Shown here piece by piece: positions 657 to 17,715 of a stretch of DNA of 64,000 bases (positions are counted from its first letter, which is position 1; the number at the start of each line of letters is the position of its first letter). Location of the stretch: positions 1-64,000 of IMG/VR virus record IMGVR_UViG_3300009108_000751; one strand, 5' to 3'. The notes under the pieces were generated by a model. That model saw nothing but the letters and a program-made list of their open reading frames with translations. It was not told where the DNA came from and did not search any database. The translations under genes and the position numbers were made by a program.

Positions 657-887
657 ATGAGTCACGTTGGAGAACCCGAGGGCGAGATTCCTCAGAACAT
701 TTCCTCCGAACCCTCGGGTTCTCCTTTCGTGCCCGGCGACTTAGTCCTTGTAAAGGATACGGCGCAGCAGGGCACGATCACACGTATTCCCTCCCAGTAC
801 TACTCGGAGGTTCACGTGAATGGCCGGAGGATGATGATGCCTAATGAGTGGCTCACGCGGTGTAACTCGGAAAGCCCAGGGTTATAA
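657..887 (+). CDS. small hypothetical protein, KOW/SH3-like
   Basis: FVPGDLVLVKD..QGTITRI pattern; ATG directly after the upstream stop. Confidence 0.5.
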   Translation: MSHVGEPEGEIPQNISSEPSGSPFVPGDLVLVKDTAQQGTITRIPSQYYSEVHVNGRRMMMPNEWLTRCNSESPGL

Positions 888-888
888 T
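860..888 (+). promoter_or_regulatory. GTGTAA-N17-TATAAT promoter
   Basis: GTGTAA 860-865, TATAAT 883-888, AGGAGG and ATG 908 downstream. Confidence 0.8.
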
Positions 889-907
889 ATAAGCGCAAGG
901 AGGAAAC

Positions 908-1219
908 ATGCAGATTGGCGATCTTATCAAGCCCAAGATGCACCTGGAAGCGCTTAGAGAACCGCATAGAGAGGATCACGGCTTACTTGAAGTGCACACA
1001 CGTTGGGAAGATCCTAAGAAGGAGTTTAAGATTCTCAATAGTCACTCAGGCGAGTTGCATGCGGTTGCGATGATTGTCGGCACGGAACGTGTCCGCAGGC
1101 GCGATCGGCGCAATAAGTCAGGTATCGCGATGATGGTACCCAAGATCAAGTTGCTCATCGGCGGTCAAGTTGCTTTGATCACCAAGGGCAAGTTGGAACA
1201 CCTGTTTGAACCGGTGTAA
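908..1219 (+). CDS. hypothetical protein (SH3-like N-terminus MQIGDLIK)
   Basis: Strong SD AGGAGG; its stop codon is the TAA of the next GTGTAA box. Confidence 0.7.
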   Translation: MQIGDLIKPKMHLEALREPHREDHGLLEVHTRWEDPKKEFKILNSHSGELHAVAMIVGTERVRRRDRRNKSGIAMMVPKIKLLIGGQVALITKGKLEHLFEPV

Positions 1220-1242
1220 CTCTAAAACAGTATAGATATAAT
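1214..1242 (+). promoter_or_regulatory. GTGTAA-N17-TATAAT promoter
   Basis: GTGTAA 1214-1219, TATAAT 1237-1242. Confidence 0.8.
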
Positions 1243-1260
1243 AAGGGCGAAGGAGGCTTC

Positions 1261-2583
1261 ATGGCCAAGAAAGAATCAACCGGCGATCTTCCTAAAGCAG
1301 TTCAGGACTACATGGACAAGCTTAAGGTTTCGGCGGAAGAATACGCTCAAAAGGTAGAGGACGCTAAGTCTTTTGACATTGATCCTCACTTGGTTAAGCT
1401 CATGTGGGACGAACCGTTTTATAGCGCTATTAGCCGCCGGATCAGCAAGTCAAGAAGCCTTGACCTCCCGACCGCCGGCGTCTGTGTGATCGATGGTTCA
1501 CCTAGTCTGCTCTGGAACCCGGTCTTCTTCAACGAGATGACTGAGAAAGAGGTGCGCGGTGTCCTGATCCACGAGTTCATGCACTTGATCTACGACCACG
1601 TGACGCTGAGGAAGCGGGATCCCCACATGCTGTGGAACCTGGCCACCGACTGCGCGATCAATAGCATGATCCCAGAAAGCAACCTACCCGTGGACTGTGT
1701 GTTCCCCGGCAAGATGAACCCCAAGGCGGATCCCACCGACCCGATCTGGAATGCGATCGCCTCCTTCCCGAAAGGCCAGAGCTCTGACTGGTACATGAGC
1801 CGGCTGATGGAAGACGAGGACGTCCAGCAGAAGATGGAGGATATCCAGAACGGTGAGGGTGACGCAGCGGAATACGGCTTCGATGACCACGAGGGTTGGG
1901 GCGACATGAGTGACGCTGAGAAGGAGCTGGTGAAAGGCAAGATCCGCGAGATCCTGCGGGACGCGGTGAAGGAAGCTGACGCCAAGAACGGCTGGGGTTC
2001 GGTTCCCTCCGACTGCCGCGAGCAACTGCGCTCAATGGTGAGTAATGAGGTGGACTGGAAAGCGATCCTCCGGCAAACCATTGGCATGGCGCACAGCTCC
2101 GAGCGTACCACCTCCCGCAAGCGGCGCAACCGGAAGTACCGGTTCATGCATCCCGGCGTGAAACGCAAACGGATGGCGCGCGTCCTCGTCGCGATCGATC
2201 AATCGGGCTCCGTGGGTAATGAAGCCCTCGAGCTCCTGTTCGGTGAGCTGGCGTCCCTCGCAAAGCGAGTTGACTTCGACATCGTGCACTTCGACACCTC
2301 CGTGGATGAGAAGAGCCTGACCACCTGGCGGCGCGGACAACGCATCGCGCCCCACCGCACGCGGATGGGTGGTACCGACTTCAACGCTCCCACCGAGTTC
2401 GTCAACAAGCACAAGGGCCAATACGACCTGATGGTGGTGCTCACTGACGGTGAAGCTCCGGAGCCCAAGCCGTGCCTCGTGCGTCGAGCCTGGATCCTCG
2501 TCCCTGGAACCTCGATGTACTTCGACACCCCTGAGACGGTGATCAAGATGAAAGCTGAGAAAGATAAAAAGAATGCTGCGTGA
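1261..2583 (+). CDS. DUF2201-type metallopeptidase fused to a vWA domain
   Basis: HExxH (LIHEFMH), NLATDCAIN, C-terminal MIDAS DQSGS...GGT...LTDG; partner AAA+ gene upstream. Confidence 0.85.
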   Translation: MAKKESTGDLPKAVQDYMDKLKVSAEEYAQKVEDAKSFDIDPHLVKLMWDEPFYSAISRRISKSRSLDLPTAGVCVIDGSPSLLWNPVFFNEMTEKEVRGVLIHEFMHLIYDHVTLRKRDPHMLWNLATDCAINSMIPESNLPVDCVFPGKMNPKADPTDPIWNAIASFPKGQSSDWYMSRLMEDEDVQQKMEDIQNGEGDAAEYGFDDHEGWGDMSDAEKELVKGKIREILRDAVKEADAKNGWGSVPSDCREQLRSMVSNEVDWKAILRQTIGMAHSSERTTSRKRRNRKYRFMHPGVKRKRMARVLVAIDQSGSVGNEALELLFGELASLAKRVDFDIVHFDTSVDEKSLTTWRRGQRIAPHRTRMGGTDFNAPTEFVNKHKGQYDLMVVLTDGEAPEPKPCLVRRAWILVPGTSMYFDTPETVIKMKAEKDKKNAA

Positions 2584-3398
2584 TCTGAGAGATTCTGTTT
2601 GGCACGCCGGCGTGGTGGTTGCCACCGTCAGCTTGAGTGCCGCTTTTCTGGGCGGGATCGGCCTGATCCTGGTTCGAGAAGCTTACCGTGACTGGAAGGG
2701 TGAGAAGATCAAGCCCATCAAAGTGTGGGAGGAGAAGAAGTGGCCCGACAGGGTGATGAAGACTCTTGCTGACGAGGATCCTAAGTCCGGATTGGATGTG
2801 CTATGATGTGGATTGCTGAGATTGCGATGTGGGTTCTGGCGACCCTGCTCATCACGGGCGGCTTCGCCGCGATCATCGCTAACGCGTTCTTTGGCTACCC
2901 TGACGGAGATTGACGTGCCCGTATGGCTCAACCACACCCTGATGGTTCTGGTCTGTGTCGCAGCATATGTCTTCTCCTTTCTAACACTTTACAAAACTTG
3001 ATGAGATTATGACCCTTTTAGAAACACTTGCTTTCTTGTTCGCAATTGCCTATCACGTCCTGATTGCCTGGTTCGGCATCACTACCCTGATCTGGATCTT
3101 TTGGGAACGTCGTACAGTCCGACCGCTGGAAGCCCGGATCAATCGGCTCGATTATGAGATCGAGGAGATCGAGGGGCACGACTTCATGCGAGGTGAGACC
3201 CCTGAAAGCCGAGCGCTACGCAAAGCACGAGACATCGATAAGCTGGCCATGAACGACGAGGAGGAGCGGATCGACAAGTTCCTGCGCAAGTGGGGCTTCT
3301 TTCGCGTGTTCTACCGCGACCCCTACTCCCGCTCAGCAACCCGTTACACCCGAGAACGCCAACGGCTACAAAAGAGCCTTGGCATTGTAGATTCCTGA
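2573..3398 (+). CDS. run of small membrane proteins (2573-2806, 2803-2913, 2915-3001, 3009-3398)
   Basis: Consecutive, overlapping short ORFs, each with one hydrophobic helix. Confidence 0.5.
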
Positions 3399-3408
3399 GA
3401 GACACAGT

Positions 3409-3720
3409 ATGATCACCAAAGGAGATCTGATGATCGAAGATAAAGAAGAGCCCCAGATCCGAGACCTGAAGGCGTTGATGGATAAGTGCGGAGACAGCCT
3501 TCCCACACCATGGGACCGCGATTGGGGTGCAGCCTCACCGAGTTACCCATGGCACGTATACGTGGTGTCTCAAGGTCAGAAACCGCACCGCATCTGGTCC
3601 TTCAAGGATCGCCAGAGCGCGCACGATCTGGCTAAGAAGAACCTGCCGACTTACCGCAAGTCCGGAGGCTTCGTGATGGTGCACAACTACCTCACTGGTA
3701 AGTCGATCACGCTCAAATGA
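3409..3720 (+). CDS. hypothetical protein
   Basis: 103-aa ORF, ATGA overlap with the next gene. Confidence 0.55.
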   Translation: MITKGDLMIEDKEEPQIRDLKALMDKCGDSLPTPWDRDWGAASPSYPWHVYVVSQGQKPHRIWSFKDRQSAHDLAKKNLPTYRKSGGFVMVHNYLTGKSITLK

Positions 3721-4328
3721 TCAAGCTGCTTAGTAAGCTTCCTTGGTCTTTCACGCTCGCCGTCTCCGGCGGGCCTGACTCTATGGCGGCACTCGACTTC
3801 TTCCATCGAGGCAAGAAGGACTTTAGGGTTGTCCACGTTAATCACGGCACAGTGCACGCATCCGAAGCTGAAGAACTGGTAAGGTCTGAGTGCGCACGTC
3901 TCCAGGTGAACTTGCGCGTAGAGAAGGTCATTCGAAAGCGAGACCTGCAGGAGAGCTGGGAAGAGTTCTGGCGCAACGAGCGCTACCGGATCTTCGACAC
4001 AGTCACAGGTCCTGTGCTCACCTGTCACAACCTTGACGACGCGGTCGAGTGGTGGGTTTACACAGCAATGCATGGCCGGCCGCGACTTATTCCCGAGCGC
4101 AACGGCTCCGTGATCCGACCTTTCCTGCTCACTCCCAAGAAGACGCTGAGGAAGTGGTGCAAGGATCACGACGTTGCCTTCTGCGACGATCCGGGCAATG
4201 TCAATGAACAATATATGAGATCCATCGTTCGCCACCAGATAGTGCCTCTGGGCAAGCGGGTCAATCCGGGCCTGGAAAAGGTCGTGAAGAAGATGCTGAT
4301 CGCGCAACACGGCGCGGTGGGCAAGTGA
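3717..4328 (+). CDS. tilS: tRNA(Ile)-lysidine synthetase-like protein, PP-loop catalytic domain only
   Basis: AVSGGPDS, HVNHG, TCHNLDDAVE, IRPFL, DDPGN, RSIVRH match TilS N-domain motifs; only 203 aa. Confidence 0.8.
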   Translation: MIKLLSKLPWSFTLAVSGGPDSMAALDFFHRGKKDFRVVHVNHGTVHASEAEELVRSECARLQVNLRVEKVIRKRDLQESWEEFWRNERYRIFDTVTGPVLTCHNLDDAVEWWVYTAMHGRPRLIPERNGSVIRPFLLTPKKTLRKWCKDHDVAFCDDPGNVNEQYMRSIVRHQIVPLGKRVNPGLEKVVKKMLIAQHGAVGK

Positions 4329-4609
4329 GCGAACTCCAAGAAGGGCGACCTGAGGTTGAGCCGGGTGACTTGATCGTGTTCGAGGACGGCACCGATCACC
4401 CGTCAAACTTTCTGGTATGTGAGATCTGCAGGGACAAGGGCGATAGACCAGTACTGCGGGGATTATGGAATAGCGACACCGGCCAGATGGGCGCAGTGCT
4501 TCGAGGTTACGCTGAAGTCATGACTGCCGACATGCTCAAGCAGCACTTTCTAACTCGGTCTACCGACAAGTGGATCCGGGAAGACAAGATCCTGAGGATC
4601 TGGGGATGA
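4325..4609 (+). CDS. hypothetical protein (SH3-like)
   Basis: GTGA overlap with tilS; VEPGDLIVF. Confidence 0.5.
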   Translation: MSELQEGRPEVEPGDLIVFEDGTDHPSNFLVCEICRDKGDRPVLRGLWNSDTGQMGAVLRGYAEVMTADMLKQHFLTRSTDKWIREDKILRIWG

Positions 4610-4866
4610 AAATTGAACCGCAAAGCAAGCTAATGCACGCTATCCTGAACGCTGACCGCGTCTTCAAGGGCATTATCGACGGTTCCTACACTCTTACCAC
4701 TGACGGAGGAGTATTTAGATTAGGGCACGGGGAAGACCACTGGCTGTGGAAGGGGCATAATCGAGTAGCCTTCGTAGTTAAACAAGGTGACGAATGGCAC
4801 GTTACAATGCTAGCACCAGAACATATTGACCTACTGGAGGGCCACGATGCTGGAACTACTCCTTAG
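4606..4866 (+). CDS. hypothetical protein
   Basis: ATGA overlap; probable start 4606. Confidence 0.5.
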   Translation: MKIEPQSKLMHAILNADRVFKGIIDGSYTLTTDGGVFRLGHGEDHWLWKGHNRVAFVVKQGDEWHVTMLAPEHIDLLEGHDAGTTP

Positions 4867-5152
4867 CCTTGCGTTGACGGCACCGCCGCAATACTATCAT
4901 AAACCCAAACAACCCAAGGCCACTTACCGAAAGGCCGTCCAAAAGCGCCAAGTAGACGGAGTTGTCAGGTATCTCCGCCGGCAAGATCCTGCAGTTATCC
5001 AGCAGGTGATGCGTCGTATGGGCTGGATGTTTCGCACCGAACCGCGGGATGCTTGCCGAAAGAAGAAGAAGTCGGATCTGGAAAAGATCAACGACTGGGA
5101 AATGAGAATGCTGTGTGAAATGGCAGGGCTTCCCTGTTACAAGAAAAGGTAA
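4847..5152 (+). CDS. hypothetical protein with signal-peptide-like N-terminus
   Basis: SD GGAGG; MLELLLSLALTAPP. Confidence 0.5.
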   Translation: MLELLLSLALTAPPQYYHKPKQPKATYRKAVQKRQVDGVVRYLRRQDPAVIQQVMRRMGWMFRTEPRDACRKKKKSDLEKINDWEMRMLCEMAGLPCYKKR

Positions 5153-5181
5153 GTGTAAATCTCCCTCGTGATCGTTATAAT
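5153..5181 (+). promoter_or_regulatory. GTGTAA-N17-TATAAT promoter driving the tRNA
   Basis: GTGTAA 5153-5158, TATAAT 5176-5181. Confidence 0.8.
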
Positions 5182-5197
5182 ATAATGTATGAGATAT

Positions 5198-5274
5198 GGG
5201 GGATTAGCTCAATTGGTCAGAGCACTCGACTCATAATCGATAGGTTCTGGGTTCAAGTCCCAGGTCCCCTACCA
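5198..5274 (+). tRNA. tRNA with CAT anticodon (Ile2 favoured; elongator Met possible)
   Basis: Cloverleaf: acceptor GGGGGAT/GTCCCCT, D arm GCTC/GAGC, anticodon arm TCGA-CTCATAA-TCGA, T arm CTGGG-TTCAAGT-CCCAG, encoded CCA; lacks initiator hallmarks. Confidence 0.92.
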
Positions 5275-5584
5275 ACCAGACCTGAGCACGTCGTCAAACT
5301 GCTCACACGGGAGTTACACAGTCATGGATGTTAGAGCACCCTGTCCTTTCGCCACTTCGATCGCAGCGTATCTCACGTTTCCTAACCCTGGCGCAAAGCC
5401 CAAGGTGTTCGTGACACGTGAGCAGTTGTGTGAGATGAAGTTAGTGGACGCTGAGAAACGCCCAGTGGAACGCAAAGGTTTAGGCGAGAACGTTGATACT
5501 TATGCTTGATGTACGACGAATCCCTTATAGGTGTTATGATGCTGGGCTTTATTGCTTTCGGGATCATGATATCGATGGCGTTTG

Positions 5585-5899
5585 ATGGCGATCTCTGAAG
5601 TACTTCGCCTAAGATACCTCAAGGAACCTGGAGAAGAAATGATGAATGGTGTGACCTACTACACTGTTAGTTATCACATGCAACCGATAGCACACTTCAA
5701 GGATTATAGTGCAGCCGTGAGATTCGCCTCTGAAGAACGTAAGCGTCGGCTTGAGGCAGTCAAAACCCTGGATCCGCCCATGCTAAAGGGTGAAATGCGA
5801 GGAGAAGTTGTCAGCATCAAGTACGGAGTTGCAGTTCAGCAAGTTGATATCGTCTTTGCAGACATGATAGACAGTAGCGAGGAAATCAAGTTTGGCTGA
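5585..5899 (+). CDS. hypothetical protein
   Basis: ~104-aa ORF in the co-directional run. Confidence 0.5.
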   Translation: MAISEVLRLRYLKEPGEEMMNGVTYYTVSYHMQPIAHFKDYSAAVRFASEERKRRLEAVKTLDPPMLKGEMRGEVVSIKYGVAVQQVDIVFADMIDSSEEIKFG

Positions 5900-6179
5900 C
5901 AACACGCGTGCTTTACTAATGCGGGTTTTGACTGGCAAGGGCACAGATCTAGACAAGCTCGACGCAGTTTCTAACTTAATCGCAGAAAAGATGGCGATGT
6001 CCGAAGCAATGTCTGACAAGATAACAGCAGGAAGCTTTGTCCAGGGACACAACGTTCTCAAGCACTTGCTTAGCTTAGATCGTGTTCTCGAGACAATGTC
6101 TCTGATGGAGACTACGGGAGATCACGATGTCCCAGAACTCTGTGTTGTCACTGACGGTGACTGCGTCGGGAAAAACTAA
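5892..6179 (+). CDS. hypothetical protein
   Basis: 95-aa ORF overlapping the previous stop. Confidence 0.5.
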   Translation: MADNTRALLMRVLTGKGTDLDKLDAVSNLIAEKMAMSEAMSDKITAGSFVQGHNVLKHLLSLDRVLETMSLMETTGDHDVPELCVVTDGDCVGKN

Positions 6180-6201
6180 CAAATCAGGCTCAATAGCTCT
6201 T

Positions 6202-6230
6202 GTGTAACATACTTACTAACGTGGTATGAT
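6202..6230 (+). promoter_or_regulatory. GTGTAA-N17-TATGAT promoter
   Basis: GTGTAA 6202-6207, TG-G-TATGAT 6225-6230. Confidence 0.7.
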
Positions 6231-6249
6231 GTACGCGGAGGAAAAAGGT

Positions 6250-6468
6250 ATGGCTTCCTTAAAGCGACAACGAAAAGTTATTAGTCCTCGACAGCGTCCC
6301 CGTCACACCCCACCCAAAGAACTCGTGCTGGAACTACCACTTCCACGTCACGAGAGTATACCCAGGGATCACGACGTTGAAGCGCAAGAAAGCTCGAAAG
6401 AGCAAGGCGAGGTTATCATCAACCTCAACGAAGAAGACGATCCCTGTGTCATCCGTGATGCGTTCTAA
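6250..6468 (+). CDS. small disordered protein (basic N-terminus, LELPLP motif, acidic tail)
   Basis: SD GGAGG; start 6250 because ATG 6226 overlaps the -10 box. Confidence 0.55.
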   Translation: MASLKRQRKVISPRQRPRHTPPKELVLELPLPRHESIPRDHDVEAQESSKEQGEVIINLNEEDDPCVIRDAF

Positions 6469-6637
6469 GTTCACCACCGCAGAGATCGAAGAAGTCACTT
6501 TTGAATACCAAAGGATGCTAGATGCCGCGATATCCGACGGCAACAAGAAGAGCATCAATGCCCTAGTCCAAATCATCGCCGACCTTCACGTTTGTGTAAA
6601 ACACGCATCTGATGGTTATAATAAGGATGAAGACTAG
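6458..6637 (+). CDS. hypothetical protein
   Basis: Overlaps the previous stop; probable ATG 6458. Confidence 0.45.
   Translation: MRSKFTTAEIEEVTFEYQRMLDAAISDGNKKSINALVQIIADLHVCVKHASDGYNKDED
6594..6622 (+). promoter_or_regulatory. GTGTAA-N17-TATAAT promoter
   Basis: GTGTAA 6594-6599, TATAAT 6617-6622. Confidence 0.8.
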
Positions 6638-6646
6638 GAGATAAAG

Positions 6647-6787
6647 ATGGACGCGATACTCGCTCTCGCTTTACTATTCGGGGTTCCACTACTATCAGCA
6701 CTTTTTATTGTACGTGAGGCGCGCCTTGCGCGCGAGAGGCACGTTGCAAAGCTCCAAGAGGAAAGGGAGAATGAACGATGGATCTGA
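6647..6787 (+). CDS. 46-aa membrane peptide
   Basis: SD AGGAG, MDAILALALLFGVPLLSALFIV (below the ORF-track cutoff). Confidence 0.55.
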   Translation: MDAILALALLFGVPLLSALFIVREARLARERHVAKLQEERENERWI

Positions 6788-6987
6788 TCCAAGAAGGTAA
6801 TCTGCTCATCCAGCAGGTGACTGACCTGCTCAACGAAGTGAGTCCTGAGAAATGTCCAAGCGGCCCTGAGTTCACTAACTTTCTTGTTGCGAACGCTGAT
6901 CGTCTTCCTACTGACGCGGGCACAATCGTGACGCTCGCTGCAGACCTTGAAGCTCAGTTACTGGAGCACGAAGGCACCGTTCACTGA
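6778..6987 (+). CDS. hypothetical protein
   Basis: SD GGGAG; ends just before the next promoter. Confidence 0.55.
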   Translation: MDLIQEGNLLIQQVTDLLNEVSPEKCPSGPEFTNFLVANADRLPTDAGTIVTLAADLEAQLLEHEGTVH

Positions 6988-6988
6988 T

Positions 6989-7017
6989 GTGTAAGTTCGA
7001 AGCGCTGAGTATATAAT
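6989..7017 (+). promoter_or_regulatory. GTGTAA-N17-TATAAT promoter
   Basis: GTGTAA 6989-6994, TATAAT 7012-7017. Confidence 0.8.
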
Positions 7018-7038
7018 ATCAGCGATTGGAGGCAAGGC

Positions 7039-11682: not shown

Positions 11683-11691
11683 GAGAAAGCC

Positions 11692-11922
11692 ATGCAGCTC
11701 GCACACGCTCAAGCGATCGTTGAAGAACTTACACAGACTTTAGGTGTTGAAGCCTCTGTTCGAGAGAACTACTCGGGTCGAGGCATGTATGGCCGTACGA
11801 CCGCGGCGGTCAGCACTCACTACTCGGAAGATGTCGTCGCCGCTGCGCGCGATCTCGGCCTTCCGCTCCGTCGCTCCAACCTCAACGTTGACAGCATGGG
11901 CTTGGGCAAGGTGGTTTACTAG
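11692..11922 (+). CDS. small phage protein with YSGRGMYG motif
   Basis: SD AGGAG; motif recognised from small phage proteins. Confidence 0.65.
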   Translation: MQLAHAQAIVEELTQTLGVEASVRENYSGRGMYGRTTAAVSTHYSEDVVAAARDLGLPLRRSNLNVDSMGLGKVVY

Positions 11923-11961
11923 TGGTGTAAGTCGTTCGACTCTCACGACGACCCAAGAGCT

Positions 11962-11990
11962 GTGTAAGTTCCGGGGCAGCCTGGTATAAT
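11962..11990 (+). promoter_or_regulatory. GTGTAA-N17-TATAAT promoter
   Basis: GTGTAA 11962-11967, TATAAT 11985-11990; an orphan GTGTAA at 11925 has no -10. Confidence 0.8.
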
Positions 11991-12024
11991 ATCCACGTAA
12001 AGAACAAAGCCTAAGGGGCGCAAC

Positions 12025-12354
12025 ATGGCAACCGGCATCTTCATTCCCAAGCGCGAGATCACCGAAGCTATTCAGCGACACTGTGACCGCATTCAAGAAG
12101 AGCTTAGCAACTCCTTCGATATCGGTGACCCAGTTCAGGCCAGGCACGGTCGGGCACTGTGGGACGCTCAGGTCGAGATTGCTCGAGACAGGCTGGAAGC
12201 CAGAATGGAACAAGCCTTGGGCACTGCGGTGGACGACATCATCGTGGAGCTCGACGACGGTGAGTTCTTCGCTCAAGCAGCGCAAGCAATTGACGAGGAG
12301 GAGACCATTCCCGGTGTCCAACAGCTGTCGGAGTTGTGTAAGCCGCAGCGCTGA
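12025..12354 (+). CDS. hypothetical acidic protein
   Basis: Follows the promoter leader; stop falls in the next promoter spacer. Confidence 0.6.
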   Translation: MATGIFIPKREITEAIQRHCDRIQEELSNSFDIGDPVQARHGRALWDAQVEIARDRLEARMEQALGTAVDDIIVELDDGEFFAQAAQAIDEEETIPGVQQLSELCKPQR

Positions 12355-12364
12355 GTGTTATAAT
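12336..12364 (+). promoter_or_regulatory. GTGTAA-N17-TATAAT promoter
   Basis: GTGTAA 12336-12341, TATAAT 12359-12364; leader shares 22 nt with that at 11991. Confidence 0.8.
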
Positions 12365-12397
12365 ATCCACGTAAAGAACAAAGCCTGGGGAGGCAAT

Positions 12398-12721
12398 ATG
12401 GTTTTAGAAGTTCAAACTCACAACGATGGTAACATCAACGTTAACGGCACGTGCCTCCAAGGCTACCTCAACGACACTCAGGGCCAGCAGCTGGTCGAGA
12501 AGTTCGGTGAACCCCTGCTCGGATATCCCGAGGACAAGGTCGAGTTCGAGTGGAACCTCCTGATCGAGGGCAAGCCGATCACGATCTACTCGTGGAAGAA
12601 CTACGGCCAGAAGTCGTTCGAGCAGATCCGGGTGTGGAACGTGGGTGGCAAGAACAAGCAAGTGCTCGACCTCCTCCGTCAGGTCGGGCTCAGGCCCAGT
12701 GAGTCACCCAGCTTTTGGTAG
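12398..12721 (+). CDS. small phage protein (GTCLQGY...FGEP...DKV..EW...TIYSWK...WNVGG pattern)
   Basis: SD GGGGAGG, ATG 12398; pattern recognised from aquatic phages. Confidence 0.7.
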   Translation: MVLEVQTHNDGNINVNGTCLQGYLNDTQGQQLVEKFGEPLLGYPEDKVEFEWNLLIEGKPITIYSWKNYGQKSFEQIRVWNVGGKNKQVLDLLRQVGLRPSESPSFW

Positions 12722-12722
12722 T

Positions 12723-12751
12723 GTGTAACTCCAAGGGCAGCTGGTTATAAT
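12723..12751 (+). promoter_or_regulatory. GTGTAA-N17-TATAAT promoter
   Basis: GTGTAA 12723-12728, TATAAT 12746-12751. Confidence 0.8.
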
Positions 12752-12790
12752 ATAAACGAAGAAAACGCAAACAACCTGGGGAGGTTCTAA

Positions 12791-13534
12791 ATGCGACTCA
12801 AAACTCAACATGCCGATATCGAACGCGGCGCAAACATTCTCTCGATCGATATTCCGGACCAGCTCAAGAAGCGCTGCAAGACCGGCATCAAGTTTATCGA
12901 TGACGCTTTCGGTGGCAAGGGCATGACCCCATCGGTCTGCACCCTCTTTACCGGTACGCCAGGTGCGGGTAAGACCACGCTCATGCTCCAGCTGGCTGAC
13001 AGCTTAACGCGTCAAGGCCATGTCTGCCTCTTTAACACGGCAGAGGAAAGCCTCTATCAGGTTCGTGGTGTGGTGGATCGGCTCAAGCTACGCAACGGCT
13101 TCGTCTGCGGCCAGGACAACCATGTCCCCACGCTGCTCAAGCACTGTGATGAGATTCGTGAAGCCAACCCTGGTAAGCAACTCTTCGTCATCATCGACTC
13201 GCTTCAAACGCTGGATGATGGGCACTTCAACTCCGGCCGCATTACGACGGCGACGGCTGAACGCTCACTCCAAGCCATCACGGACTACTGCAAAGAGCAT
13301 TACGCCTGCGCAATCGTGGTTGGCCAGGTGACCAAGTCTGGTAAGATGGCGGGTTCTAACAAGCTCAAGCACATGGTGGACGCTCATTGCCACCTGCGCA
13401 TCGAGGACAGCGAGAAGAGTGAGTTCTTCCAGTACCGCGTCTTCGAGGTTCCCAAGAACCGCTTCGGTGGCGCTGGCCACGGATACGTGCTGGACATGAC
13501 GGCACGCGGACTTCGGGAGTACGGCATTCTCTAG
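12791..13534 (+). CDS. radA: RadA/Sms-like RecA-fold ATPase (ATPase domain only)
   Basis: GTPGAGKT, AEES, IIDSLQ, GQVTKSGKMAGSNKLKHMVDA, KNRFG; no N-terminal Zn finger or Lon-like domain. Confidence 0.8.
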   Translation: MRLKTQHADIERGANILSIDIPDQLKKRCKTGIKFIDDAFGGKGMTPSVCTLFTGTPGAGKTTLMLQLADSLTRQGHVCLFNTAEESLYQVRGVVDRLKLRNGFVCGQDNHVPTLLKHCDEIREANPGKQLFVIIDSLQTLDDGHFNSGRITTATAERSLQAITDYCKEHYACAIVVGQVTKSGKMAGSNKLKHMVDAHCHLRIEDSEKSEFFQYRVFEVPKNRFGGAGHGYVLDMTARGLREYGIL

Positions 13535-13588
13535 GCACAACTCTCCCCAGGGGCGGGAGGTGAGGCAACTCCCTCCCGCCGTGCCTAG
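13531..13588 (+). terminator. GC-rich stem-loop after radA (terminator or processing/stabilising site)
   Basis: GGCGGGAGG-T-GAG-GCAA-CTC-CCTCCCGCC within outer CTAGGCAC/GTGCCTAG; no clear U tract. Confidence 0.5.
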
Positions 13589-13597
13589 GGGTCTTGT

Positions 13598-13626
13598 GTG
13601 TAAGATGAGAAGTCATAGGTTATAAT
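13598..13626 (+). promoter_or_regulatory. GTGTAA-N17-TATAAT promoter
   Basis: GTGTAA 13598-13603, TATAAT 13621-13626. Confidence 0.8.
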
Positions 13627-13653
13627 AGCCCTGAAGATAACAAGGAGCTCCTA

Positions 13654-13848
13654 ATGGATCCCAACAAAGTTCACGTCGTCAATGCTTATACTCGCAAAGT
13701 CTACGGTTCGTTTGACCTGGACATTGATGCACGTCAATACATGCGCAACATGCTCCTGAAGGAGTGCGACGGTCCTAATGATGACGACCGCGAGGTGCCA
13801 AAGATCTGGTGCTTCGATGCGCGTGGAGTTGAGACTACATCCTTCTAG
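13654..13848 (+). CDS. hypothetical protein
   Basis: SD AAGGAG; stop abuts the next promoter. Confidence 0.6.
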   Translation: MDPNKVHVVNAYTRKVYGSFDLDIDARQYMRNMLLKECDGPNDDDREVPKIWCFDARGVETTSF

Positions 13849-13876
13849 GTGTAAGTTTCAGAGAACCTGTTATAAT
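13849..13876 (+). promoter_or_regulatory. GTGTAA-N16-TATAAT promoter
   Basis: GTGTAA 13849-13854, TATAAT 13871-13876 (only 16-bp copy). Confidence 0.75.
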
Positions 13877-13907
13877 ATAAGCGAATCATATGCCTGGGGA
13901 GGCAACA

Positions 13908-14177
13908 ATGGCTGAGAATAAAGAATACATTTCTGGCGACTATGTCGCGATCATTGCATCGATGGACGATGTTGAGAGTGTGGATGAACTGGTTGAGATG
14001 GTGAAGGGTGGCCAACGCCCCGAGCATTCCAGCCTCTTCCGCTTTGAGCTGGACACTGACACACCGCAGCTGGTCAACCTGGTCGGTCGCGGTTACTTCT
14101 TCGAGAACGGTTGGAGCATGGACCACACGGTGTCGTGGATCGGTCCGGAAAGCGAGGTCCGCGATGCCCAAGCCTAA
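13908..14177 (+). CDS. hypothetical acidic protein
   Basis: SD GGGGAGG, ATG 13908. Confidence 0.6.
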   Translation: MAENKEYISGDYVAIIASMDDVESVDELVEMVKGGQRPEHSSLFRFELDTDTPQLVNLVGRGYFFENGWSMDHTVSWIGPESEVRDAQA

Positions 14178-14382
14178 CAAGTATCTCTACCTCTACGTCG
14201 TCCAAGGCAACTACGGTGGCTATGGATGGGAGGACCTTGCGGAGAGCGAATCCTACCAGGAAGCTCACTACAACCTCAAGGAGTACCGCATCTCAAGTGG
14301 CCCAGCTCCACATCGTATCATTCAGCGACGTGAGCCCAACCCGGCATACTTCAGCAAGCAAATGGCAGCTCCCGGTTTCTAG
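14164..14382 (+). CDS. small phage protein (YVVQGNYG..GWEDL...LKEYR pattern)
   Basis: SD GAGG, ATG 14164. Confidence 0.65.
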   Translation: MPKPNKYLYLYVVQGNYGGYGWEDLAESESYQEAHYNLKEYRISSGPAPHRIIQRREPNPAYFSKQMAAPGF

Positions 14383-14410
14383 TGTAACTTCCCGAGCTAG
14401 TAGTTATAAT
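14382..14410 (+). promoter_or_regulatory. GTGTAA-N17-TATAAT promoter
   Basis: GTGTAA 14382-14387, TATAAT 14405-14410. Confidence 0.8.
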
Positions 14411-14441
14411 GAAACGTAAAGGCGTTAAAGGGAAGAAGAAG

Positions 14442-14585
14442 ATGAAGAAGATTCCTAAGATTAGACAAAAGCACGTCAAGGAGATGCTGCTCAATCGCAA
14501 GGATGGTGCTCATCACAATCGTTCCAAGGACGTCAAGCGTGGAAGTTCACGCAAACCCAAGCACAAGGGGAAGCAGGAATGGTAG
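14442..14585 (+). CDS. 47-aa very basic peptide, possibly ArfA/BrfA-like
   Basis: MKKIPKIRQKHVKEMLLNRKDGAHHNRSKDVKRGSSRKPKHKGKQEW; first ORF after a promoter. Confidence 0.5.
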   Translation: MKKIPKIRQKHVKEMLLNRKDGAHHNRSKDVKRGSSRKPKHKGKQEW

Positions 14586-14809
14586 GCAAGAAGGTCAAGT
14601 TGACGGGTAAGAGCCGTCACGGTAAGAACCGGGTTCGTGAGCAAGGTGACGCCTGGGAAGTGGTGGGCGAGAGGGACAGCGTCCAGTTTCGCACCTCGGC
14701 TCCTGGGCCATTCCTCTTACTTCAGTCTGAAAGCACAGGACCTCACGGGCGCCACACTAGATGGGTCAGCTTACAACGTGATCCTGACTTCACCGTGGAG
14801 GTGCTATAA
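14579..14809 (+). CDS. hypothetical protein (SH3-like)
   Basis: MVGKKVKLTGKSRHGKNRVREQG..WEV. Confidence 0.6.
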   Translation: MVGKKVKLTGKSRHGKNRVREQGDAWEVVGERDSVQFRTSAPGPFLLLQSESTGPHGRHTRWVSLQRDPDFTVEVL

Positions 14810-14958
14810 TGTTTGACTTCCTGTTCTACCAAGAAGACATTCCCTCAAAGGGCTACCGAGCTGGTGACCTCAAGCCCGGATACGCAATCGCCGCATTGGC
14901 CCTATGCTTCCTGGCTGGCGCCTACCTGGAAGGACTAGAGCAAATGCAACCTTACTAG
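14809..14958 (+). CDS. 49-aa membrane peptide
   Basis: TAATG coupling, SD GGAGG, hydrophobic C-half. Confidence 0.5.
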   Translation: MFDFLFYQEDIPSKGYRAGDLKPGYAIAALALCFLAGAYLEGLEQMQPY

Positions 14959-14967
14959 CCTATTATA

Positions 14968-14996
14968 GTGTAACCCAAAAGTGGGTAGTGTACAAT
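14968..14996 (+). promoter_or_regulatory. GTGTAA-N17-TACAAT promoter
   Basis: GTGTAA 14968-14973, TACAAT 14991-14996. Confidence 0.75.
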
Positions 14997-15020
14997 AGCG
15001 GCGAATAGGAGGTGCTGGTT

Positions 15021-15477
15021 ATGGATGAATGCAGCATGGTATGTGAGAAGACAGGCGAGGTGCTCGCACGTGAGCCGTTTAGAGAGAACCTGTTGATCAC
15101 GGCTAAAGAGCAAGGCCTGCCAGTTATTAGTAAGCATAGTTTTGCCATTCATGAGAGCACCGTTTTGGTGGATTGTGGGTGTGGTGGAAACATGTATAAG
15201 TGCGGAGTGCAAGCATGAACGATAAGCAAGTAGCATTCTTATGCGGCATTGGCACAATCCTGCTCTTTCCCGCTCTTCCTATCATCGCCCTAGCCTTGGG
15301 TGTTGTTGGCTTCTTGTCACTCAAGCCTAAGGGAAGACGATAATGCAGATCGAACTCACACTCCCTCTCCCTCCTCCCGAGTGGATCGAGCGCATGGAAC
15401 GAGAGCAGCAGCCAGAGATCCAGAATGATCCCATGGTGGACTTCGACATCGACGACGGTGTAACCTTCGACCTATAG
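15021..15477 (+). CDS. three coupled small ORFs: 15021-15218 (Cys-rich), 15215-15343 (membrane), 15343-15477 (acidic, LTLPLPPP)
   Basis: SD AGGAGG; ATGA and TAATG overlaps. Confidence 0.5.
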
Positions 15478-15486
15478 AGATATAAT
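15458..15486 (+). promoter_or_regulatory. GTGTAA-N17-TATAAT promoter
   Basis: GTGTAA 15458-15463, TATAAT 15481-15486. Confidence 0.8.
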
Positions 15487-15509
15487 AGCCCTGAAGATAA
15501 GGAGCTACG

Positions 15510-15692
15510 ATGAGCAAGTCACTAACAGCCATCATCAATCGGTTCGGTGCCAAACGCCTCAAGGGCGATGGCTTCACCCAACGTATCCAGTTTAGCTCCT
15601 CCGGACAGGCACAACGTGCCGTGTGGGAGATCAGCAGCTCCACTGGACGGCAGTGCTGGAGCTCGGGTGACATCGTCGAGGTGCTCAAGTAG
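15510..15692 (+). CDS. hypothetical protein
   Basis: SD AAGGAG; single-gene cassette. Confidence 0.6.
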   Translation: MSKSLTAIINRFGAKRLKGDGFTQRIQFSSSGQAQRAVWEISSSTGRQCWSSGDIVEVLK

Positions 15693-15694
15693 CA

Positions 15695-15723
15695 GTGTAA
15701 GTCTCCAGGGCTAGTGTTATAAT
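15695..15723 (+). promoter_or_regulatory. GTGTAA-N17-TATAAT promoter
   Basis: GTGTAA 15695-15700, TATAAT 15718-15723. Confidence 0.8.
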
Positions 15724-15749
15724 AGTCCCGAAGATAAGGAGATACCGGC

Positions 15750-15920
15750 ATGGCACAGTGGGGAAACTTTACTGGCGGAGCGGCACCACTGGACGAAGCG
15801 CCAATGGACAGCGGCCCGATGTCTCCGGAGATGCAACGGCGCGTTTTCGATATTCTGGTTAGTACCGGTTCGGATCCCGCGGCACTCAAGGCTTCAGGTG
15901 AATACCCGAATGTTGTGTAA
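15750..15920 (+). CDS. 56-aa hypothetical protein
   Basis: SD AAGGAG; its stop is the TAA of the next GTGTAA. Confidence 0.55.
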   Translation: MAQWGNFTGGAAPLDEAPMDSGPMSPEMQRRVFDILVSTGSDPAALKASGEYPNVV

Positions 15921-15943
15921 CTCCCGTTGGTGGATGTTATAAT
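15915..15943 (+). promoter_or_regulatory. GTGTAA-N17-TATAAT promoter
   Basis: GTGTAA 15915-15920, TATAAT 15938-15943. Confidence 0.8.
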
Positions 15944-15964
15944 AAGGGCGAATAGGAGATGATC

Positions 15965-16260
15965 ATGGCAAGCTCACTCAAAACTTTCAAGGTTGGCTAC
16001 TCCAAGAACGTCGGCTATAAGAAGCACGGCAGTCGCACCGTAAAGGCTCGCAACGCCGAGGAAGCCAAGGTCCGAGTTCGGCACATTGTCGATGGCGCCT
16101 TTGGCCTCTACATTCAGGCTCCTCAAGTATGAGTTACGTCATCGAATATCAGGACAAGATGGGTCGACGTTTCCGAGCCGTGGTGGCCATGCTCCCGCAT
16201 TGCATCAAGGCTAAGAAAGCTGAGCTTCGTGCTCAAGGCTATAGCATTGTTGGTTACTAG
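15965..16260 (+). CDS. two coupled small basic ORFs (15965-16132, 16129-16260)
   Basis: SD AGGAG; ATGA overlap; second stop abuts the next promoter. Confidence 0.55.
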
Positions 16261-16289
16261 GTGTAACTCCCGCAAGGGCATGGTACAAT
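16261..16289 (+). promoter_or_regulatory. GTGTAA-N17-TACAAT promoter
   Basis: GTGTAA 16261-16266, TACAAT 16284-16289. Confidence 0.78.
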
Positions 16290-16313
16290 AGCCGTGAAGA
16301 TAAGGAGTTAGAG

Positions 16314-16589
16314 ATGGCCATCAAAACTGATAAGAGCGTAGGATATCATCCTGGACAGCTGGTCAAGTTCTTCAACCCCTTCAAGGAGCCGTATGAGGAG
16401 CAGATCGCCGAAGGCATCGTAACCTCAGTGGATCATTGGATGCAGACGTTGACCGTAGGTATCGGCAAGGCTCAAGCCCAGGAAGCTGAGTGGTTCGTCG
16501 GCGGACACCAGGTGGTGAAGATGAACAACCCTCACATCGAGGTCGTCCCCGACAAGGTGACTCAGATCTCCAACGTGAAAGATGTGTAA
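16314..16589 (+). CDS. hypothetical protein (SH3-like, HPGQLVKF)
   Basis: SD AAGGAG; its stop is the TAA of the next GTGTAA. Confidence 0.65.
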   Translation: MAIKTDKSVGYHPGQLVKFFNPFKEPYEEQIAEGIVTSVDHWMQTLTVGIGKAQAQEAEWFVGGHQVVKMNNPHIEVVPDKVTQISNVKDV

Positions 16590-16612
16590 CTTCGAGAGCT
16601 GTAAGTTATAAT
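16584..16612 (+). promoter_or_regulatory. GTGTAA-N17-TATAAT promoter
   Basis: GTGTAA 16584-16589, TATAAT 16607-16612. Confidence 0.8.
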
Positions 16613-16636
16613 AGTTCCGAAGATAAGGAGTTAGAG

Positions 16637-16942
16637 ATGACGTTGAATAACATTGACACCCAGTTCGCGGTAGCTCGATCAGAGATCCGTGCCCTGATGA
16701 AGCACGTCAACCCCAACACCACCGTAGGTGGCCAGGCCTGTGACGCCTTGCAAGGTATGATCGATGCGCTGGACTCCATCCAGAACGATAGCTATAAGAG
16801 CTCTGACAGCTTTCATCGCTACCCGCTAGATGTTAGAGATCGGCCTCTGCATGCGGATGACGAACCCACCAATCCTAACTTCCGGGCTTTCAAGGACCTG
16901 GAAGACGACGAGGAAATGCGGCAGACCGAAAGGTTGTGCTAG
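16637..16942 (+). CDS. hypothetical protein
   Basis: Leader ending AAGATAAGGAGTTAGAGATG, same as at 16314; ATG 16637. Confidence 0.65.
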   Translation: MTLNNIDTQFAVARSEIRALMKHVNPNTTVGGQACDALQGMIDALDSIQNDSYKSSDSFHRYPLDVRDRPLHADDEPTNPNFRAFKDLEDDEEMRQTERLC

Positions 16943-16947
16943 CACCG

Positions 16948-16976
16948 GTGTAACTCGGCGAGCTACCGGTTATAAT
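16948..16976 (+). promoter_or_regulatory. GTGTAA-N17-TATAAT promoter
   Basis: GTGTAA 16948-16953, TATAAT 16971-16976. Confidence 0.8.
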
Positions 16977-17020
16977 AAAGACGTAATAAGCCAAACAACA
17001 TACCTGGGGAGGTAACAAAC

Positions 17021-17437
17021 ATGGCAAACGCAGAACGCAAAACTTGGATCCACGGATTCTTCCAAAACACATTCAACGCTGAGACTGGCAACTGGCAGCT
17101 CCGTGATAGCCGTAACGAGGCTCTGATCGCAGAAGGTCCCAAGGCCGCTAAGATCGGCAAGCTCGGTGCAGCTATGACCAAGACTGAGAAGGCGTGGGAC
17201 AAGCTCCGCAACCTGGAACGTCAGATGGAACTGGCGCAGCGCGCTTACAGCAAAGCTCACCGCGTGATGTTGGACCTCCAGCTAGACATCGACATGGAAG
17301 AGGCATCTCGGGCTAGCGTGGAAGGACTTCGCGAAGAGACTCGCAAGAGCCTCCTCCGCATCGCTAAGCGACGCAACATCGTTGGCCGTCACAATCTTAC
17401 CAAGGAAGAACTGGTCAATGCGCTAAGTATCGACTAA
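17021..17437 (+). CDS. coiled-coil protein with C-terminal Rho-N/HeH-like motif
   Basis: LLRIAKRRNIVGRHNLTKEELVNAL resembles the Rho termination factor N-terminal HeH. Confidence 0.6.
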   Translation: MANAERKTWIHGFFQNTFNAETGNWQLRDSRNEALIAEGPKAAKIGKLGAAMTKTEKAWDKLRNLERQMELAQRAYSKAHRVMLDLQLDIDMEEASRASVEGLREETRKSLLRIAKRRNIVGRHNLTKEELVNALSID

Positions 17438-17443
17438 GACATC

Positions 17444-17709
17444 ATGGACAGACTAGAGGCAATACTCTTCGTCGTGCTAGGCATCACCGCTTCGGTGGTG
17501 CTTGGCATATTGGGCGAGGCGGTAGAAGAAAGAGTAAGAACCTGGTTGAGAGATCGGAAGTACGGAGATAAGAAGTGATGAGAAAGATCGCGGCGAAGAT
17601 CCTATTCCTACTAGCGAGAGTGTTCCTCAGTAGGGGGATGCTAGTGGGACAGTGGTGCCAGAACAAGGCCATACTCCTGCTCAGCGGTGTAAGTGCGCAT
17701 CGCGAGTGA
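17444..17709 (+). CDS. two small ORFs (17444-17578 membrane peptide; 17578-17709)
   Basis: TGATG coupling; hydrophobic segments. Confidence 0.4.
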
Positions 17710-17715
17710 TATAAT
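17687..17715 (+). promoter_or_regulatory. GTGTAA-N17-TATAAT promoter (last copy seen)
   Basis: GTGTAA 17687-17692, TATAAT 17710-17715. Confidence 0.8.

What the first reader, a model, noticed from the sequence alone, without database searches (positions are those of the whole stretch)
860..17715. 21 copies of a non-canonical promoter GTGTAA-N17-TATAAT
Seen: GTGTAA at 860, 1214, 5153, 6202, 6594, 6989, 11056, 11962, 12336, 12723, 13598, 13849, 14382, 14968, 15458, 15695, 15915, 16261, 16584, 16948 and 17687. Each is followed 17 bp later (16 in one case) by TATAAT (twice TACAAT, once TATGAT), then a short leader, SD and start. I found no complete copy after 17.7 kb. Known: sigma70 -35 is TTGACA; T4 uses GTTTAC at early promoters and a MotA box at middle promoters. 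Inference: an invariant GTGTAA at the -35 position is read either by a host sigma with an unusual region 4 or by a phage activator or appropriated sigma. I do not recognise this promoter class.
Basis: partly seen in the sequence, partly recalled or inferred. Interest (0 to 1): 0.82.

Follow-up and report, generated by a model that had tools for sequence, protein, structure and literature searches.

The report
Jumbo-phage early promoters with odd -35
A bank of 22 near-identical promoters, GTGTAA-17 bp-TATAAT, drives the small early genes of an uncultivated 236-kb phage, and its non-standard upstream box is conserved across a whole clade of related phages, but what reads that box is still unknown.

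Summary
Nineteen copies are exact against 0.02 expected by chance. The -35 box never varies, while the spacer is unconserved. Each copy is followed by a conserved C/G at the expected start site, a 9-38 nt leader and a Shine-Dalgarno plus ATG; one copy drives a tRNA instead.

The window is the first 64 kb of IMG/VR contig 3300009108_000751, a 235,681-bp myophage. The promoters sit exactly in a GC-rich island (GC3 0.66 against 0.38 elsewhere) of mostly orphan genes. The island avoids AUA and AGA codons and encodes a TilS domain plus a tRNA(CAU).

The same promoter class, (G/A)TG(T/C)A(A/G)-N17-TATAAT, recurs in relatives with 29-55% GC. GTGTAA itself is found in several deep branches.

Just past the window the phage encodes a sigma related to gp55, the late sigma of T4-type phages. 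That gene uses late-type codons, and the motif is absent around sigma and structural genes in 80 relatives.

Best reading: these are early promoters used by host RNA polymerase at time zero, with a clade-specific -35. This is a new variant of a known kind.

The parts
860..888 (+). promoter 1, GTGTAA-N17-TATAAT; drives ORF 908-1219 (103 aa)
1214..1242 (+). promoter 2; drives the VWA/metallopeptidase gene 1261-2583 and the operon running to about 5152. The GTGTAA overlaps the stop codon of the upstream ORF.
5153..5181 (+). promoter 3; drives tRNA(CAU) 5198-5274, about 10 nt after the expected start site
6202..6230 (+). promoter 4 (-10 is TATGAT); ORF 6250-6468
6594..6622 (+). promoter 5; ORF 6647-6787
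6989..7017 (+). promoter 6; ORF 7039-7908 (289 aa)
11056..11084 (+). promoter 7; ORF 11113-11682
It lies inside ORF 11113-11682, ahead of an in-frame SD and ATG at 11470.
11962..11990 (+). promoter 9; ORF 12025-12354
12336..12364 (+). promoter 10; ORF 12398-12721
12723..12751 (+). promoter 11; RadA/KaiC-like ATPase 12791-13534
13598..13626 (+). promoter 12; ORF 13654-13848. This is the only copy with a strong upstream hairpin (-27.5 kcal/mol).
13849..13876 (+). promoter 13 (16-bp spacer); ORF 13908-14177
14382..14410 (+). promoter 14; ORF 14442-14585
14968..14996 (+). promoter 15 (-10 is TACAAT); ORF 15021-15218
15458..15486 (+). promoter 16; ORF 15510-15692
15695..15723 (+). promoter 17; ORF 15750-15920
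15915..15943 (+). promoter 18; ORF 15959-16132
16261..16289 (+). promoter 19 (-10 is TACAAT); ORF 16314-16589
16584..16612 (+). promoter 20; ORF 16637-16942
16948..16976 (+). promoter 21; ORF 17021-17437
17687..17715 (+). promoter 22, the last copy; ORF 17737-17922
1..19600 (+). GC-rich island that holds all the promoters. GC is about 0.53 and GC3 0.66, against 0.39 and 0.38 downstream. AUA and AGA codons are avoided. Most genes are orphans.
3717..4328 (+). TilS N-terminal (lysidine synthetase) domain protein, in the operon of promoter 2
   Evidence: TIGR02432, 101.5 bits against a cut-off of 93.6
5198..5274 (+). tRNA with anticodon CAU, called Met by the tool; possibly tRNA-Ile2, the substrate of TilS

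Best explanation
These are 22 strong early promoters, each a promoter-leader-Shine-Dalgarno cassette, of an uncultivated 236-kb myophage. Host multisubunit RNA polymerase with its primary sigma uses them as soon as the DNA enters the cell.

**How each part is read.**
- Sigma regions 2 and 3 read a perfect TATAAT, a G at -14 and a 17-bp spacer.
- Transcription starts at the conserved C(-1)/G(+1), 7 nt past the -10 box.
- GTGTAA lies exactly where sigma region 4 binds. It keeps T-34, G-33 and A-30 of TTGACA.
- Its three non-consensus bases are held by selection for a clade-specific contact that I cannot identify.

**What the promoters serve.** They express a host-codon-adapted island of takeover and retooling genes: a MoxR-like ATPase, a VWA protein, a RadA-like ATPase, a TilS domain with tRNA(CAU), methyltransferases and many orphan genes. 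This happens before the AT-rich, AUA/AGA-rich remainder of the genome is expressed, including the phage's own gp55-related sigma.

**Shown versus inferred.** Shown: the anatomy, the statistics, the conservation in relatives and the codon partition. Inferred: promoter activity, early timing and the identity of the polymerase and sigma.
For: **Promoter anatomy.**
- All 22 copies are on the + strand against 0.02 expected.
- The information sits in two boxes 17 bp apart, plus G at -14 and CGAA at the expected start; the spacer is unconserved.
- Every copy is followed within 9-38 nt by an SD and ATG, or by a tRNA.

**Early timing.**
- The promoter region coincides with a GC3 0.66 island. There AUA is 7% of Ile codons and AGA 5% of Arg codons, against 28% and 45% downstream.
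- The island encodes a TilS N domain and a tRNA(CAU) under one of these promoters. This fits genes that must be translated by the naive host.
- The phage sigma gene (contig 64303-65070) has late-type codons: GC3 0.36, AUA 5 of 14 Ile, AGA 9 of 14 Arg.
- That sigma resembles the late sigma gp55 and sits beside baseplate genes.
- The motif is at chance level in 882 kb around the sigma and structural genes of 80 relatives, and it is absent from window and contig positions 18-73 kb.

**Precedent.** Clade-specific -35 variants in early promoter cassettes of large myophages are known: T4/PST TTTACW, KVP40/nt-1 TTGYVH, RB49 TTGACA (PMC4122927) and T4 GTTTAC at -36 to -31 (PMC1524935).
Against: - GTGTAA matches TTGACA at only 3 of 6 positions. 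The non-consensus bases are invariant in 22 of 22 copies. Selection for strength at an ordinary sigma-70 should pull towards TTGACA, so a specific unknown contact is needed.
- The same box is kept in phages of 29-51% GC. That is easier to explain by a phage-borne reader than by many hosts sharing an odd preference.
- There are no expression data, and the host is unknown. The only lead is a proteobacterial-type tmRNA.
- Only 73 of the 236 kb of the contig were seen.
Confidence: 0.5

Rival explanations
1. The promoters are read by the phage's own sigma (P0001, 255 aa, contig 64303-65070). This protein is related to gp55 but carries an extra C-terminal helix-turn-helix. Its region 2 would read TATAAT(A) and its HTH would read GTGTAA. 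The island would then be a middle-class regulon.
For: **P0001 belongs to the sigma-70 family.**
- PHROG 234 'late sigma', E 3e-4.
- hhalign to Syn9 gp55, E 7e-4, over region 2.
- Foldseek top hits are all sigma factors, probability up to 0.97.
- Atlas neighbours carry Sigma70_r2.

**Other points.**
- By my reading of the alignment, it has a conserved C-terminal HTH whose recognition helix is unlike that of sigma-70, so a non-TTGACA -35 is expected.
- Position -6 is A in 18 of 21 copies, giving TATAATA, which is close to the gp55 motif TATAAATA.
- It is a core gene: more than 2000 homologues and more than 500 IMG/VR contigs.
Against: - The sigma gene uses late-type codons and lies among structural genes.
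- The motif is absent around sigma and structural genes in 80 relatives.
- The putative recognition helix is invariant in 28 diverse homologues. The -35 box, by contrast, differs between related phages: GTGTAA, ATGTAA, ATGCAA, GTGCAA.
- The G at -14 and the perfect TATAAT are hallmarks of primary sigmas.
Confidence: 0.2
2. This is a sigma-appropriation-like mechanism. Host sigma-70 supplies the -10 and extended -10 contacts. A phage protein, either delivered with the virion or made first, replaces or remodels region 4 and binds GTGTAA.
For: - The invariance of the non-consensus bases, and the conservation of the box across phages of very different GC, points to a phage-borne specificity.
- There is a precedent in T4 MotA/AsiA middle promoters and in Alt-tuned T4 early promoters (PMC1524935).
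Against: - No MotA/AsiA/Alt-like or DNA-binding family is found among 51 window proteins.
- Only three genes of the island are conserved in relatives, and all three are ATPases or the VWA protein.
- The box sits at the canonical -35 with a 17-bp spacer, not at -30 with 11-13 bp as a MotA box does.
Confidence: 0.2
3. The repeats are not promoters. They would instead be recombination or mobility cassettes, or operator sites, that merely resemble promoters.
For: Promoter cassettes of T4-type phages (PeSLs) also act as recombination points (PMC4122927). The leaders here fall into a few repeat families.
Against: - All copies are on one strand, at a fixed distance from an SD and start codon.
- Only the two hexamers, the G at -14 and the start-site bases are conserved.
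- One copy precedes a tRNA gene.
Confidence: 0.03

Closest known systems
T4-type early promoters and PeSL cassettes (Arbiol 2010; Comeau 2014, PMC4122927; Nolan 2006, PMC1524935)
   Same: - Dozens of near-identical strong promoters, each followed by an SD and start codon, precede small orphan genes and tRNA genes in a plastic region of a large myophage.
- The -10 is TATAAT-like with a 17-bp spacer.
- The -35 departs from TTGACA in a phage-group-specific way.
- The phage also encodes a gp55-type sigma.
   Different: - The -35 is GTGTAA at -35 to -30, not GTTTAC at -36 to -31, TTTACW or TTGYVH.
- There is no A-rich UP element.
- There is no upstream stem-loop, except in 1 of 22 copies.
- The cassette region is a GC3-rich codon island.
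- The phage is not a recognisable T4 relative by DNA or protein search.
Consensus sigma-70 / extended -10 promoters
   Same: TATAAT, a 17-bp spacer, G at -14, and pyrimidine/purine at -1/+1.
   Different: The -35 matches TTGACA at 3 of 6 positions, and its mismatching bases are invariant. T at -15 is not conserved (7 of 21 copies).
T4 MotA/AsiA middle promoters (sigma appropriation)
   Same: A sigma-70-type -10 is combined with a conserved non-sigma-70 upstream box, repeated many times in a phage genome.
   Different: The MotA box (TGCTT) is centred near -30, 11-13 bp from the -10; here the box is 17 bp away. No MotA or AsiA homologue was seen in the window.
SPO1 host-takeover module
   Same: By my recollection of the literature, which I did not check here: a cluster of small genes, each with its own strong early promoter and SD, that serves host takeover.
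   Different: Those promoters are close to the host sigma-A consensus, and no codon island has been described there.
T4 gp55 late sigma (for the neighbouring gene P0001)
   Same: Region 2 is homologous, and the gene is placed next to structural genes.
   Different: P0001 is 255 aa and carries an extra, well-predicted C-terminal helical domain that reads as an HTH. gp55 has no region 4.

Membership tests
sigma-70-type housekeeping promoter | -10 hexamer TATAAT | tested here: met
   19 of 22 copies exact and 3 with one mismatch
sigma-70-type housekeeping promoter | spacer of 17 +/- 1 bp between the two hexamers | tested here: met
   21 copies with 17 bp and 1 copy with 16 bp
sigma-70-type housekeeping promoter | -35 hexamer close to TTGACA | tested here: not met
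   GTGTAA matches at 3 of 6 positions and is invariant. The consensus scan, which requires at least 4 of 6, lists none of the 22 sites.
sigma-70-type housekeeping promoter | transcription start about 7 nt after the -10 | not testable with these tools
   Only indirect evidence: a conserved C then G at the expected -1/+1
T4-type early promoter / PeSL cassette | GTTTAC (-36 to -31) or TTTACW / TTGYVH as the -35 | tested here: not met
   against PMC1524935 and PMC4122927
T4-type early promoter / PeSL cassette | A-rich UP element at -40 to -44 | tested here: not met
   The 12 columns upstream of GTGTAA that were profiled, which reach only to about -47, carry little information and show no A-richness
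T4-type early promoter / PeSL cassette | stem-loop or terminator just upstream of the promoter | tested here: not met
   Only 13598 has a strong hairpin. The other copies are within the control range, and there is no terminator excess. Some copies in relative L002 do follow T-runs.
T4-type early promoter / PeSL cassette | promoter + SD + start cassette in front of orphan genes in a plastic region | tested here: met
MotA-dependent middle promoter | TGCTT box 11-13 bp upstream of the -10 | tested here: not met
   The box here is GTGTAA, 17 bp upstream
MotA-dependent middle promoter | motA and asiA homologues in the genome | tested here: inconclusive
   None among 51 window proteins; 163 kb of the contig were not seen
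ECF-sigma promoter (sigma-X type, TGTAAC ... CGTC; consensus from my own recollection) | AAC in the -35 and a CGTC-type -10 | tested here: not met
   C follows GTGTAA in only 11 of 21 copies, and the -10 is TATAAT
single-subunit (T7-like) phage polymerase promoter | one contiguous conserved block of about 17-23 bp | tested here: not met
   The site is bipartite with an unconserved 17-bp spacer
sigma-70 protein family (for P0001, just outside the window) | region 2 fold and sequence signature | tested here: met
   PHROG 234, E 3e-4; hhalign to gp55, E 7e-4; Foldseek top hits are sigma factors; Pfam Sigma70_r2 is only E 0.13

The most novel reading that the evidence does not exclude
GTGTAA is not a host -35 at all. 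It is the cognate box of a phage-borne reader. Either way it would define a self-contained phage promoter/sigma system shared by hundreds of uncultivated jumbo phages. The system would be coupled to a codon-partitioned genome, in which a host-adapted early island installs TilS and tRNA-Ile2 for an AUA-rich late genome.
Probability: 0.3. Interest if true: 0.8.

Novelty: new variant of a known kind. Interest (0 to 1): 0.58.

Why it matters
Banks of early promoters are how large lytic phages seize a cell within minutes. Here the box at -35 is invariant, is not the bacterial consensus, and is inherited across a broad and wholly uncultivated clade of large, mostly marine, phages.

If host polymerase reads it unaided, it shows how far a -35 can drift under selection while staying functional. 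If a phage factor reads it, it is a new way of redirecting host polymerase.

The motif is also a practical marker. It delimits early regions, finds relatives in metagenomes and supplies candidate strong orthogonal promoters.

The promoter class coincides with a sharp codon-usage island, and that island carries TilS and a tRNA(CAU). This makes a testable model for temporal control of translation by codon choice in jumbo phages.

Tried and rejected
**Identity of the phage.**
- Megablast and tblastn against 50,697 GenBank phages found no close relative.

**Assembly chimera as the cause of the GC jump.**
- Rejected. Relatives L002, L003 and L014 show the same GC rise together with the same promoters. 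The same phage also assembles in three samples.

**Recent duplication as the cause of invariance.**
- Rejected, because the spacers are unconserved.

**PeSL-type upstream stem-loops.**
- Not present.

**Host identity.**
- A marine Synechococcus host was considered because of the GC3 of the island, but cyanophage Syn9 uses TTGACA-like boxes.
- The Flavobacterium phage that carries a distant homologue of the sigma shows no such motif in its first 50 kb.
- Homologues of the CysK gene gave no taxonomy.
- The 5' end of the tmRNA had no exact genome match.
- Its 3' end points only broadly to Beta- and Gammaproteobacteria.

**A distinct late promoter for the phage sigma.**
- K-mer counts around 80 sigma loci recovered only conserved coding sequence.

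**Literature.**
- Full-text searches for GTGTAA as a promoter element, and for the sample identifiers, found nothing relevant.

**IMG/VR pattern scan.**

Full report
**1. The observation**

An exact scan for GTGTAA-N16-18-TATAAT gives 19 matches. All are on the + strand between 860 and 17715, against 0.02 expected. Allowing one mismatch per hexamer adds 6202, 14968 and 16261 and nothing else in the first 18 kb. In all 22 sites the GTGTAA box itself has no mismatch, and no comparable site lies after 17.7 kb or on the - strand.

Within 1-18 kb, 19 of the 22 TATAAT and 22 of the 24 GTGTAA on the + strand belong to these sites.

A position table of the 21 copies with a 17-bp spacer shows full information in the two hexamers. 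It also shows:
- a G two bases before TATAAT, at -14, in 18 of 21 copies;
- an A just after TATAAT in 18 of 21;
- four variable bases, then C-G-A-A. This puts a pyrimidine/purine pair exactly where a bacterial polymerase would start, 7 nt after the -10.

The 17 spacer columns are almost uninformative, and whole copies are only 60-70% alike. The invariance therefore reflects selection on the boxes, not recent duplication.

Every copy is followed after a 9-38 nt leader by a Shine-Dalgarno sequence and ATG. The exception is 5153, which sits about 10 nt ahead of a tRNA. There is no excess of canonical sigma-70 sites or of intrinsic terminators in the region. Only one copy, at 13598, has a strong upstream hairpin.

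**2. What the window is**

The window is the first 64 kb of IMG/VR contig 3300009108_000751, which is 235,681 bp long. The same phage assembles in two further samples. No GenBank phage is close.

Genes in the first 18 kb:
- a MoxR-like ATPase, cut by the contig start;
- a VWA/metallopeptidase protein;
- a TilS N-domain protein;
- two methyltransferases;
- a RadA/KaiC-like ATPase;
- a CysK on the opposite strand;
- about 35 small orphan ORFs.

Downstream lie DUF444-SpoVR-PrkA, a tmRNA, a PhoH-PIN protein and a 28-kb glycan-synthesis cluster. Beyond the window come a sigma-like gene and baseplate genes.

**3. A composition island coincides with the promoters**

GC is about 0.53 up to roughly 19.6 kb and 0.39 afterwards. 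The difference is synonymous: GC3 is 0.66 against 0.38.

| Codon | Early genes | Late genes |
|---|---|---|
| AUA, share of Ile | 7% | 28% |
| AGA, share of Arg | 5% | 45% |

The island carries a TilS catalytic domain (TIGR02432, above its cut-off). About 870 nt downstream it carries a tRNA with anticodon CAU under its own GTGTAA promoter. I infer that the island is built to be translated by the naive host, and that it installs the capacity to decode AUA for the rest of the genome. This is the main argument that the promoters are truly early.

**4. Relatives**

A scan with the VWA protein, a scan with a profile of that protein and a pattern scan of IMG/VR together retrieved more than 50 related loci. 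Many carry the same promoter class on the coding strand:
- GTGTAA in L002, L131, L055, L149, L152 and others;
- a GTGTAG/GTGTAA/ATGTAA mix in L003;
- GTGCAA/GTGTAA in L014;
- ATGTAA in L127;
- ATGCAA in L133 and L156.

All have a 17-bp spacer to TATAAT, often with TGG or TGT in front of it.

On a tree of the VWA proteins the class fills the main clade and is absent from an outgroup. GTGTAA occurs in several deep branches, in loci of 29-51% GC. The GC-rich island recurs in L002, L003 and L014 but not in the AT-rich relatives.

Only the two ATPases and the VWA protein are conserved in these regions. Everything else turns over. This is the pattern of the hyperplastic early regions of T4-type phages.

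**5. A phage sigma just outside the window**

Contig 64303-65070 encodes a 255-aa protein, P0001. Evidence that it is a sigma:
- PHROG 'late sigma', E 3e-4;
- profile alignment to Syn9 gp55 over region 2, E 7e-4;
- a confident fold (pLDDT 78) whose best PDB matches are almost all sigma factors;
- Atlas neighbours that carry Sigma70_r2.

Its alignment shows a region-2-like signature and a nearly invariant C-terminal helix-turn-helix. It is a core gene, with more than 2000 homologues and more than 500 viral contigs.

- The gene uses late-type codons and lies among structural genes.
- The promoter motif is at chance level in 882 kb around this gene in 80 relatives.
- Its putative recognition helix does not vary, while the -35 box varies between phages.

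I could not confirm that the phages with variant boxes carry the same sigma. This argument is therefore suggestive, not decisive.

**6. Who reads GTGTAA**

The -10, the G at -14, the spacer and the start-site bases are those of a primary-sigma holoenzyme. GTGTAA occupies the region-4 position and keeps T-34, G-33 and A-30 of TTGACA. But its three deviating bases never vary, so some specific contact must select them.

The hypotheses, with my estimates:

| Reader | Points for or against | Estimate |
|---|---|---|
| Host holoenzyme at time zero, either an ordinary sigma with an unrecognised constraint or a host lineage with an odd region 4 | The odd-host version is weakened by the GC range of the phages that share the box and by a proteobacterial-type tmRNA. 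| 0.5 |
| A phage adaptor in the style of MotA/AsiA or Alt | No candidate seen in the window | 0.2 |
| The phage sigma P0001 | See section 5 | 0.2 |
| Not promoters | Contradicted by the anatomy | 0.03 |

The remaining 0.07 covers readings not listed here.

**7. Comparison with what is known**

The closest known system is the early-promoter cassette of T4-type myophages (PeSLs). There too the -35 is specific to the phage group: TTTACW, TTGYVH or GTTTAC.

This case differs in four ways: the hexamer itself, the lack of an UP element, the lack of a stem-loop, and the codon island. I file it as a new variant of a known kind.

Full-text searches found no description of GTGTAA as a -35 element.

Noticed in passing
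window 1-19600 against 19850-64000: There is a sharp synonymous-site partition. GC3 is 0.66 against 0.38. AUA is 7% against 28% of Ile codons, AGA 5% against 45% of Arg, and AAG 80% against 45% of Lys. The boundary coincides with the end of the promoter bank. The same GC rise is seen in relatives L002, L003 and L014.
   Followed up: partly
window 3717-4328 and 5198-5274: A TilS N-terminal (lysidine synthetase) domain protein lies about 870 nt upstream of a tRNA with anticodon CAU that has its own GTGTAA promoter. The tRNA may be tRNA-Ile2, for the AUA codons that are common in the late genes.
   Followed up: partly
L126:12705-13472 (contig 64303-65070, just past the window end): A 255-aa sigma-70-family protein related to T4 gp55 but with an added conserved C-terminal HTH. 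It is a core gene of a very large set of uncultivated big phages. Its only distant homologues in isolates are in Flavobacterium phage immuto and Microcystis phage Mel-JY01.
   Followed up: yes
window 34087-34408: A phage-borne tmRNA with tag ANDDFDIYAIAA. Its 3' 32-mer is identical to that of many Burkholderiales and of Alcanivorax, which is a weak lead to a proteobacterial host.
   Followed up: partly
window 11113-11682: Promoter 11414 lies inside this ORF, ahead of an in-frame SD and ATG at 11470. A 70-aa C-terminal product could therefore be made separately from the 189-aa protein.
   Followed up: no
window 17923-18213: The end of the island is a G-rich stretch with a GGGGGCCCCC palindrome, followed by repeated A-tract/T-tract units and a sigma-70-like site (CCGACA-N18-TATAAT, 18155-18184) ahead of the methyltransferase gene at 18214.
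   Followed up: no
window 25197-25214 and 25786-25803: There are two copies of an AT-rich motif, AAAAATTATA-NN-TTCTCT (0.01 expected), each followed by T/C-rich sequence and CTGTAA. This may be a different promoter or regulatory class in the AT-rich part.
   Followed up: no
window 26359-30813: A DUF444-SpoVR-PrkA gene trio (the YeaH/YcgB/YeaG stress-kinase set) sits in a phage. The nearest phage PrkA homologues are about 33% identical and occur in Thermus and Ralstonia jumbo phages and in huge metagenomic phages.
   Followed up: no
window 36046-64000 and on to contig position 64 kb: A 28-kb run of glycan-synthesis genes: many glycosyltransferases, GDP-mannose dehydratase, NeuB, a carbamoyltransferase, a UDP-glucose dehydrogenase and epimerases. 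It ends at the sigma and baseplate genes.
   Followed up: no
window 8559-9434 (-) and 18962-19558 (-): These are the only clear minus-strand genes: a cysteine synthase (CysK/CysM type; homologues of 80-92% identity only on short metagenomic contigs, then about 60%) and a T5orf172-domain protein.
   Followed up: partly
window 17021-17437: An early 138-aa orphan with a weak hit to the C-terminal half of an ECF sigma model (NF009166, E 0.0016) and a Rho-N/SAP-like tail. It is not conserved in relatives.
   Followed up: no
window 11088-11127, 12373-12412, 12764-12784, 13892-13918: The leaders fall into a few repeat families, for example AAAGCCTGGGGAGGCA in front of the ATG. The promoter-leader-SD units therefore look like shuffled cassettes.
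   Followed up: partly
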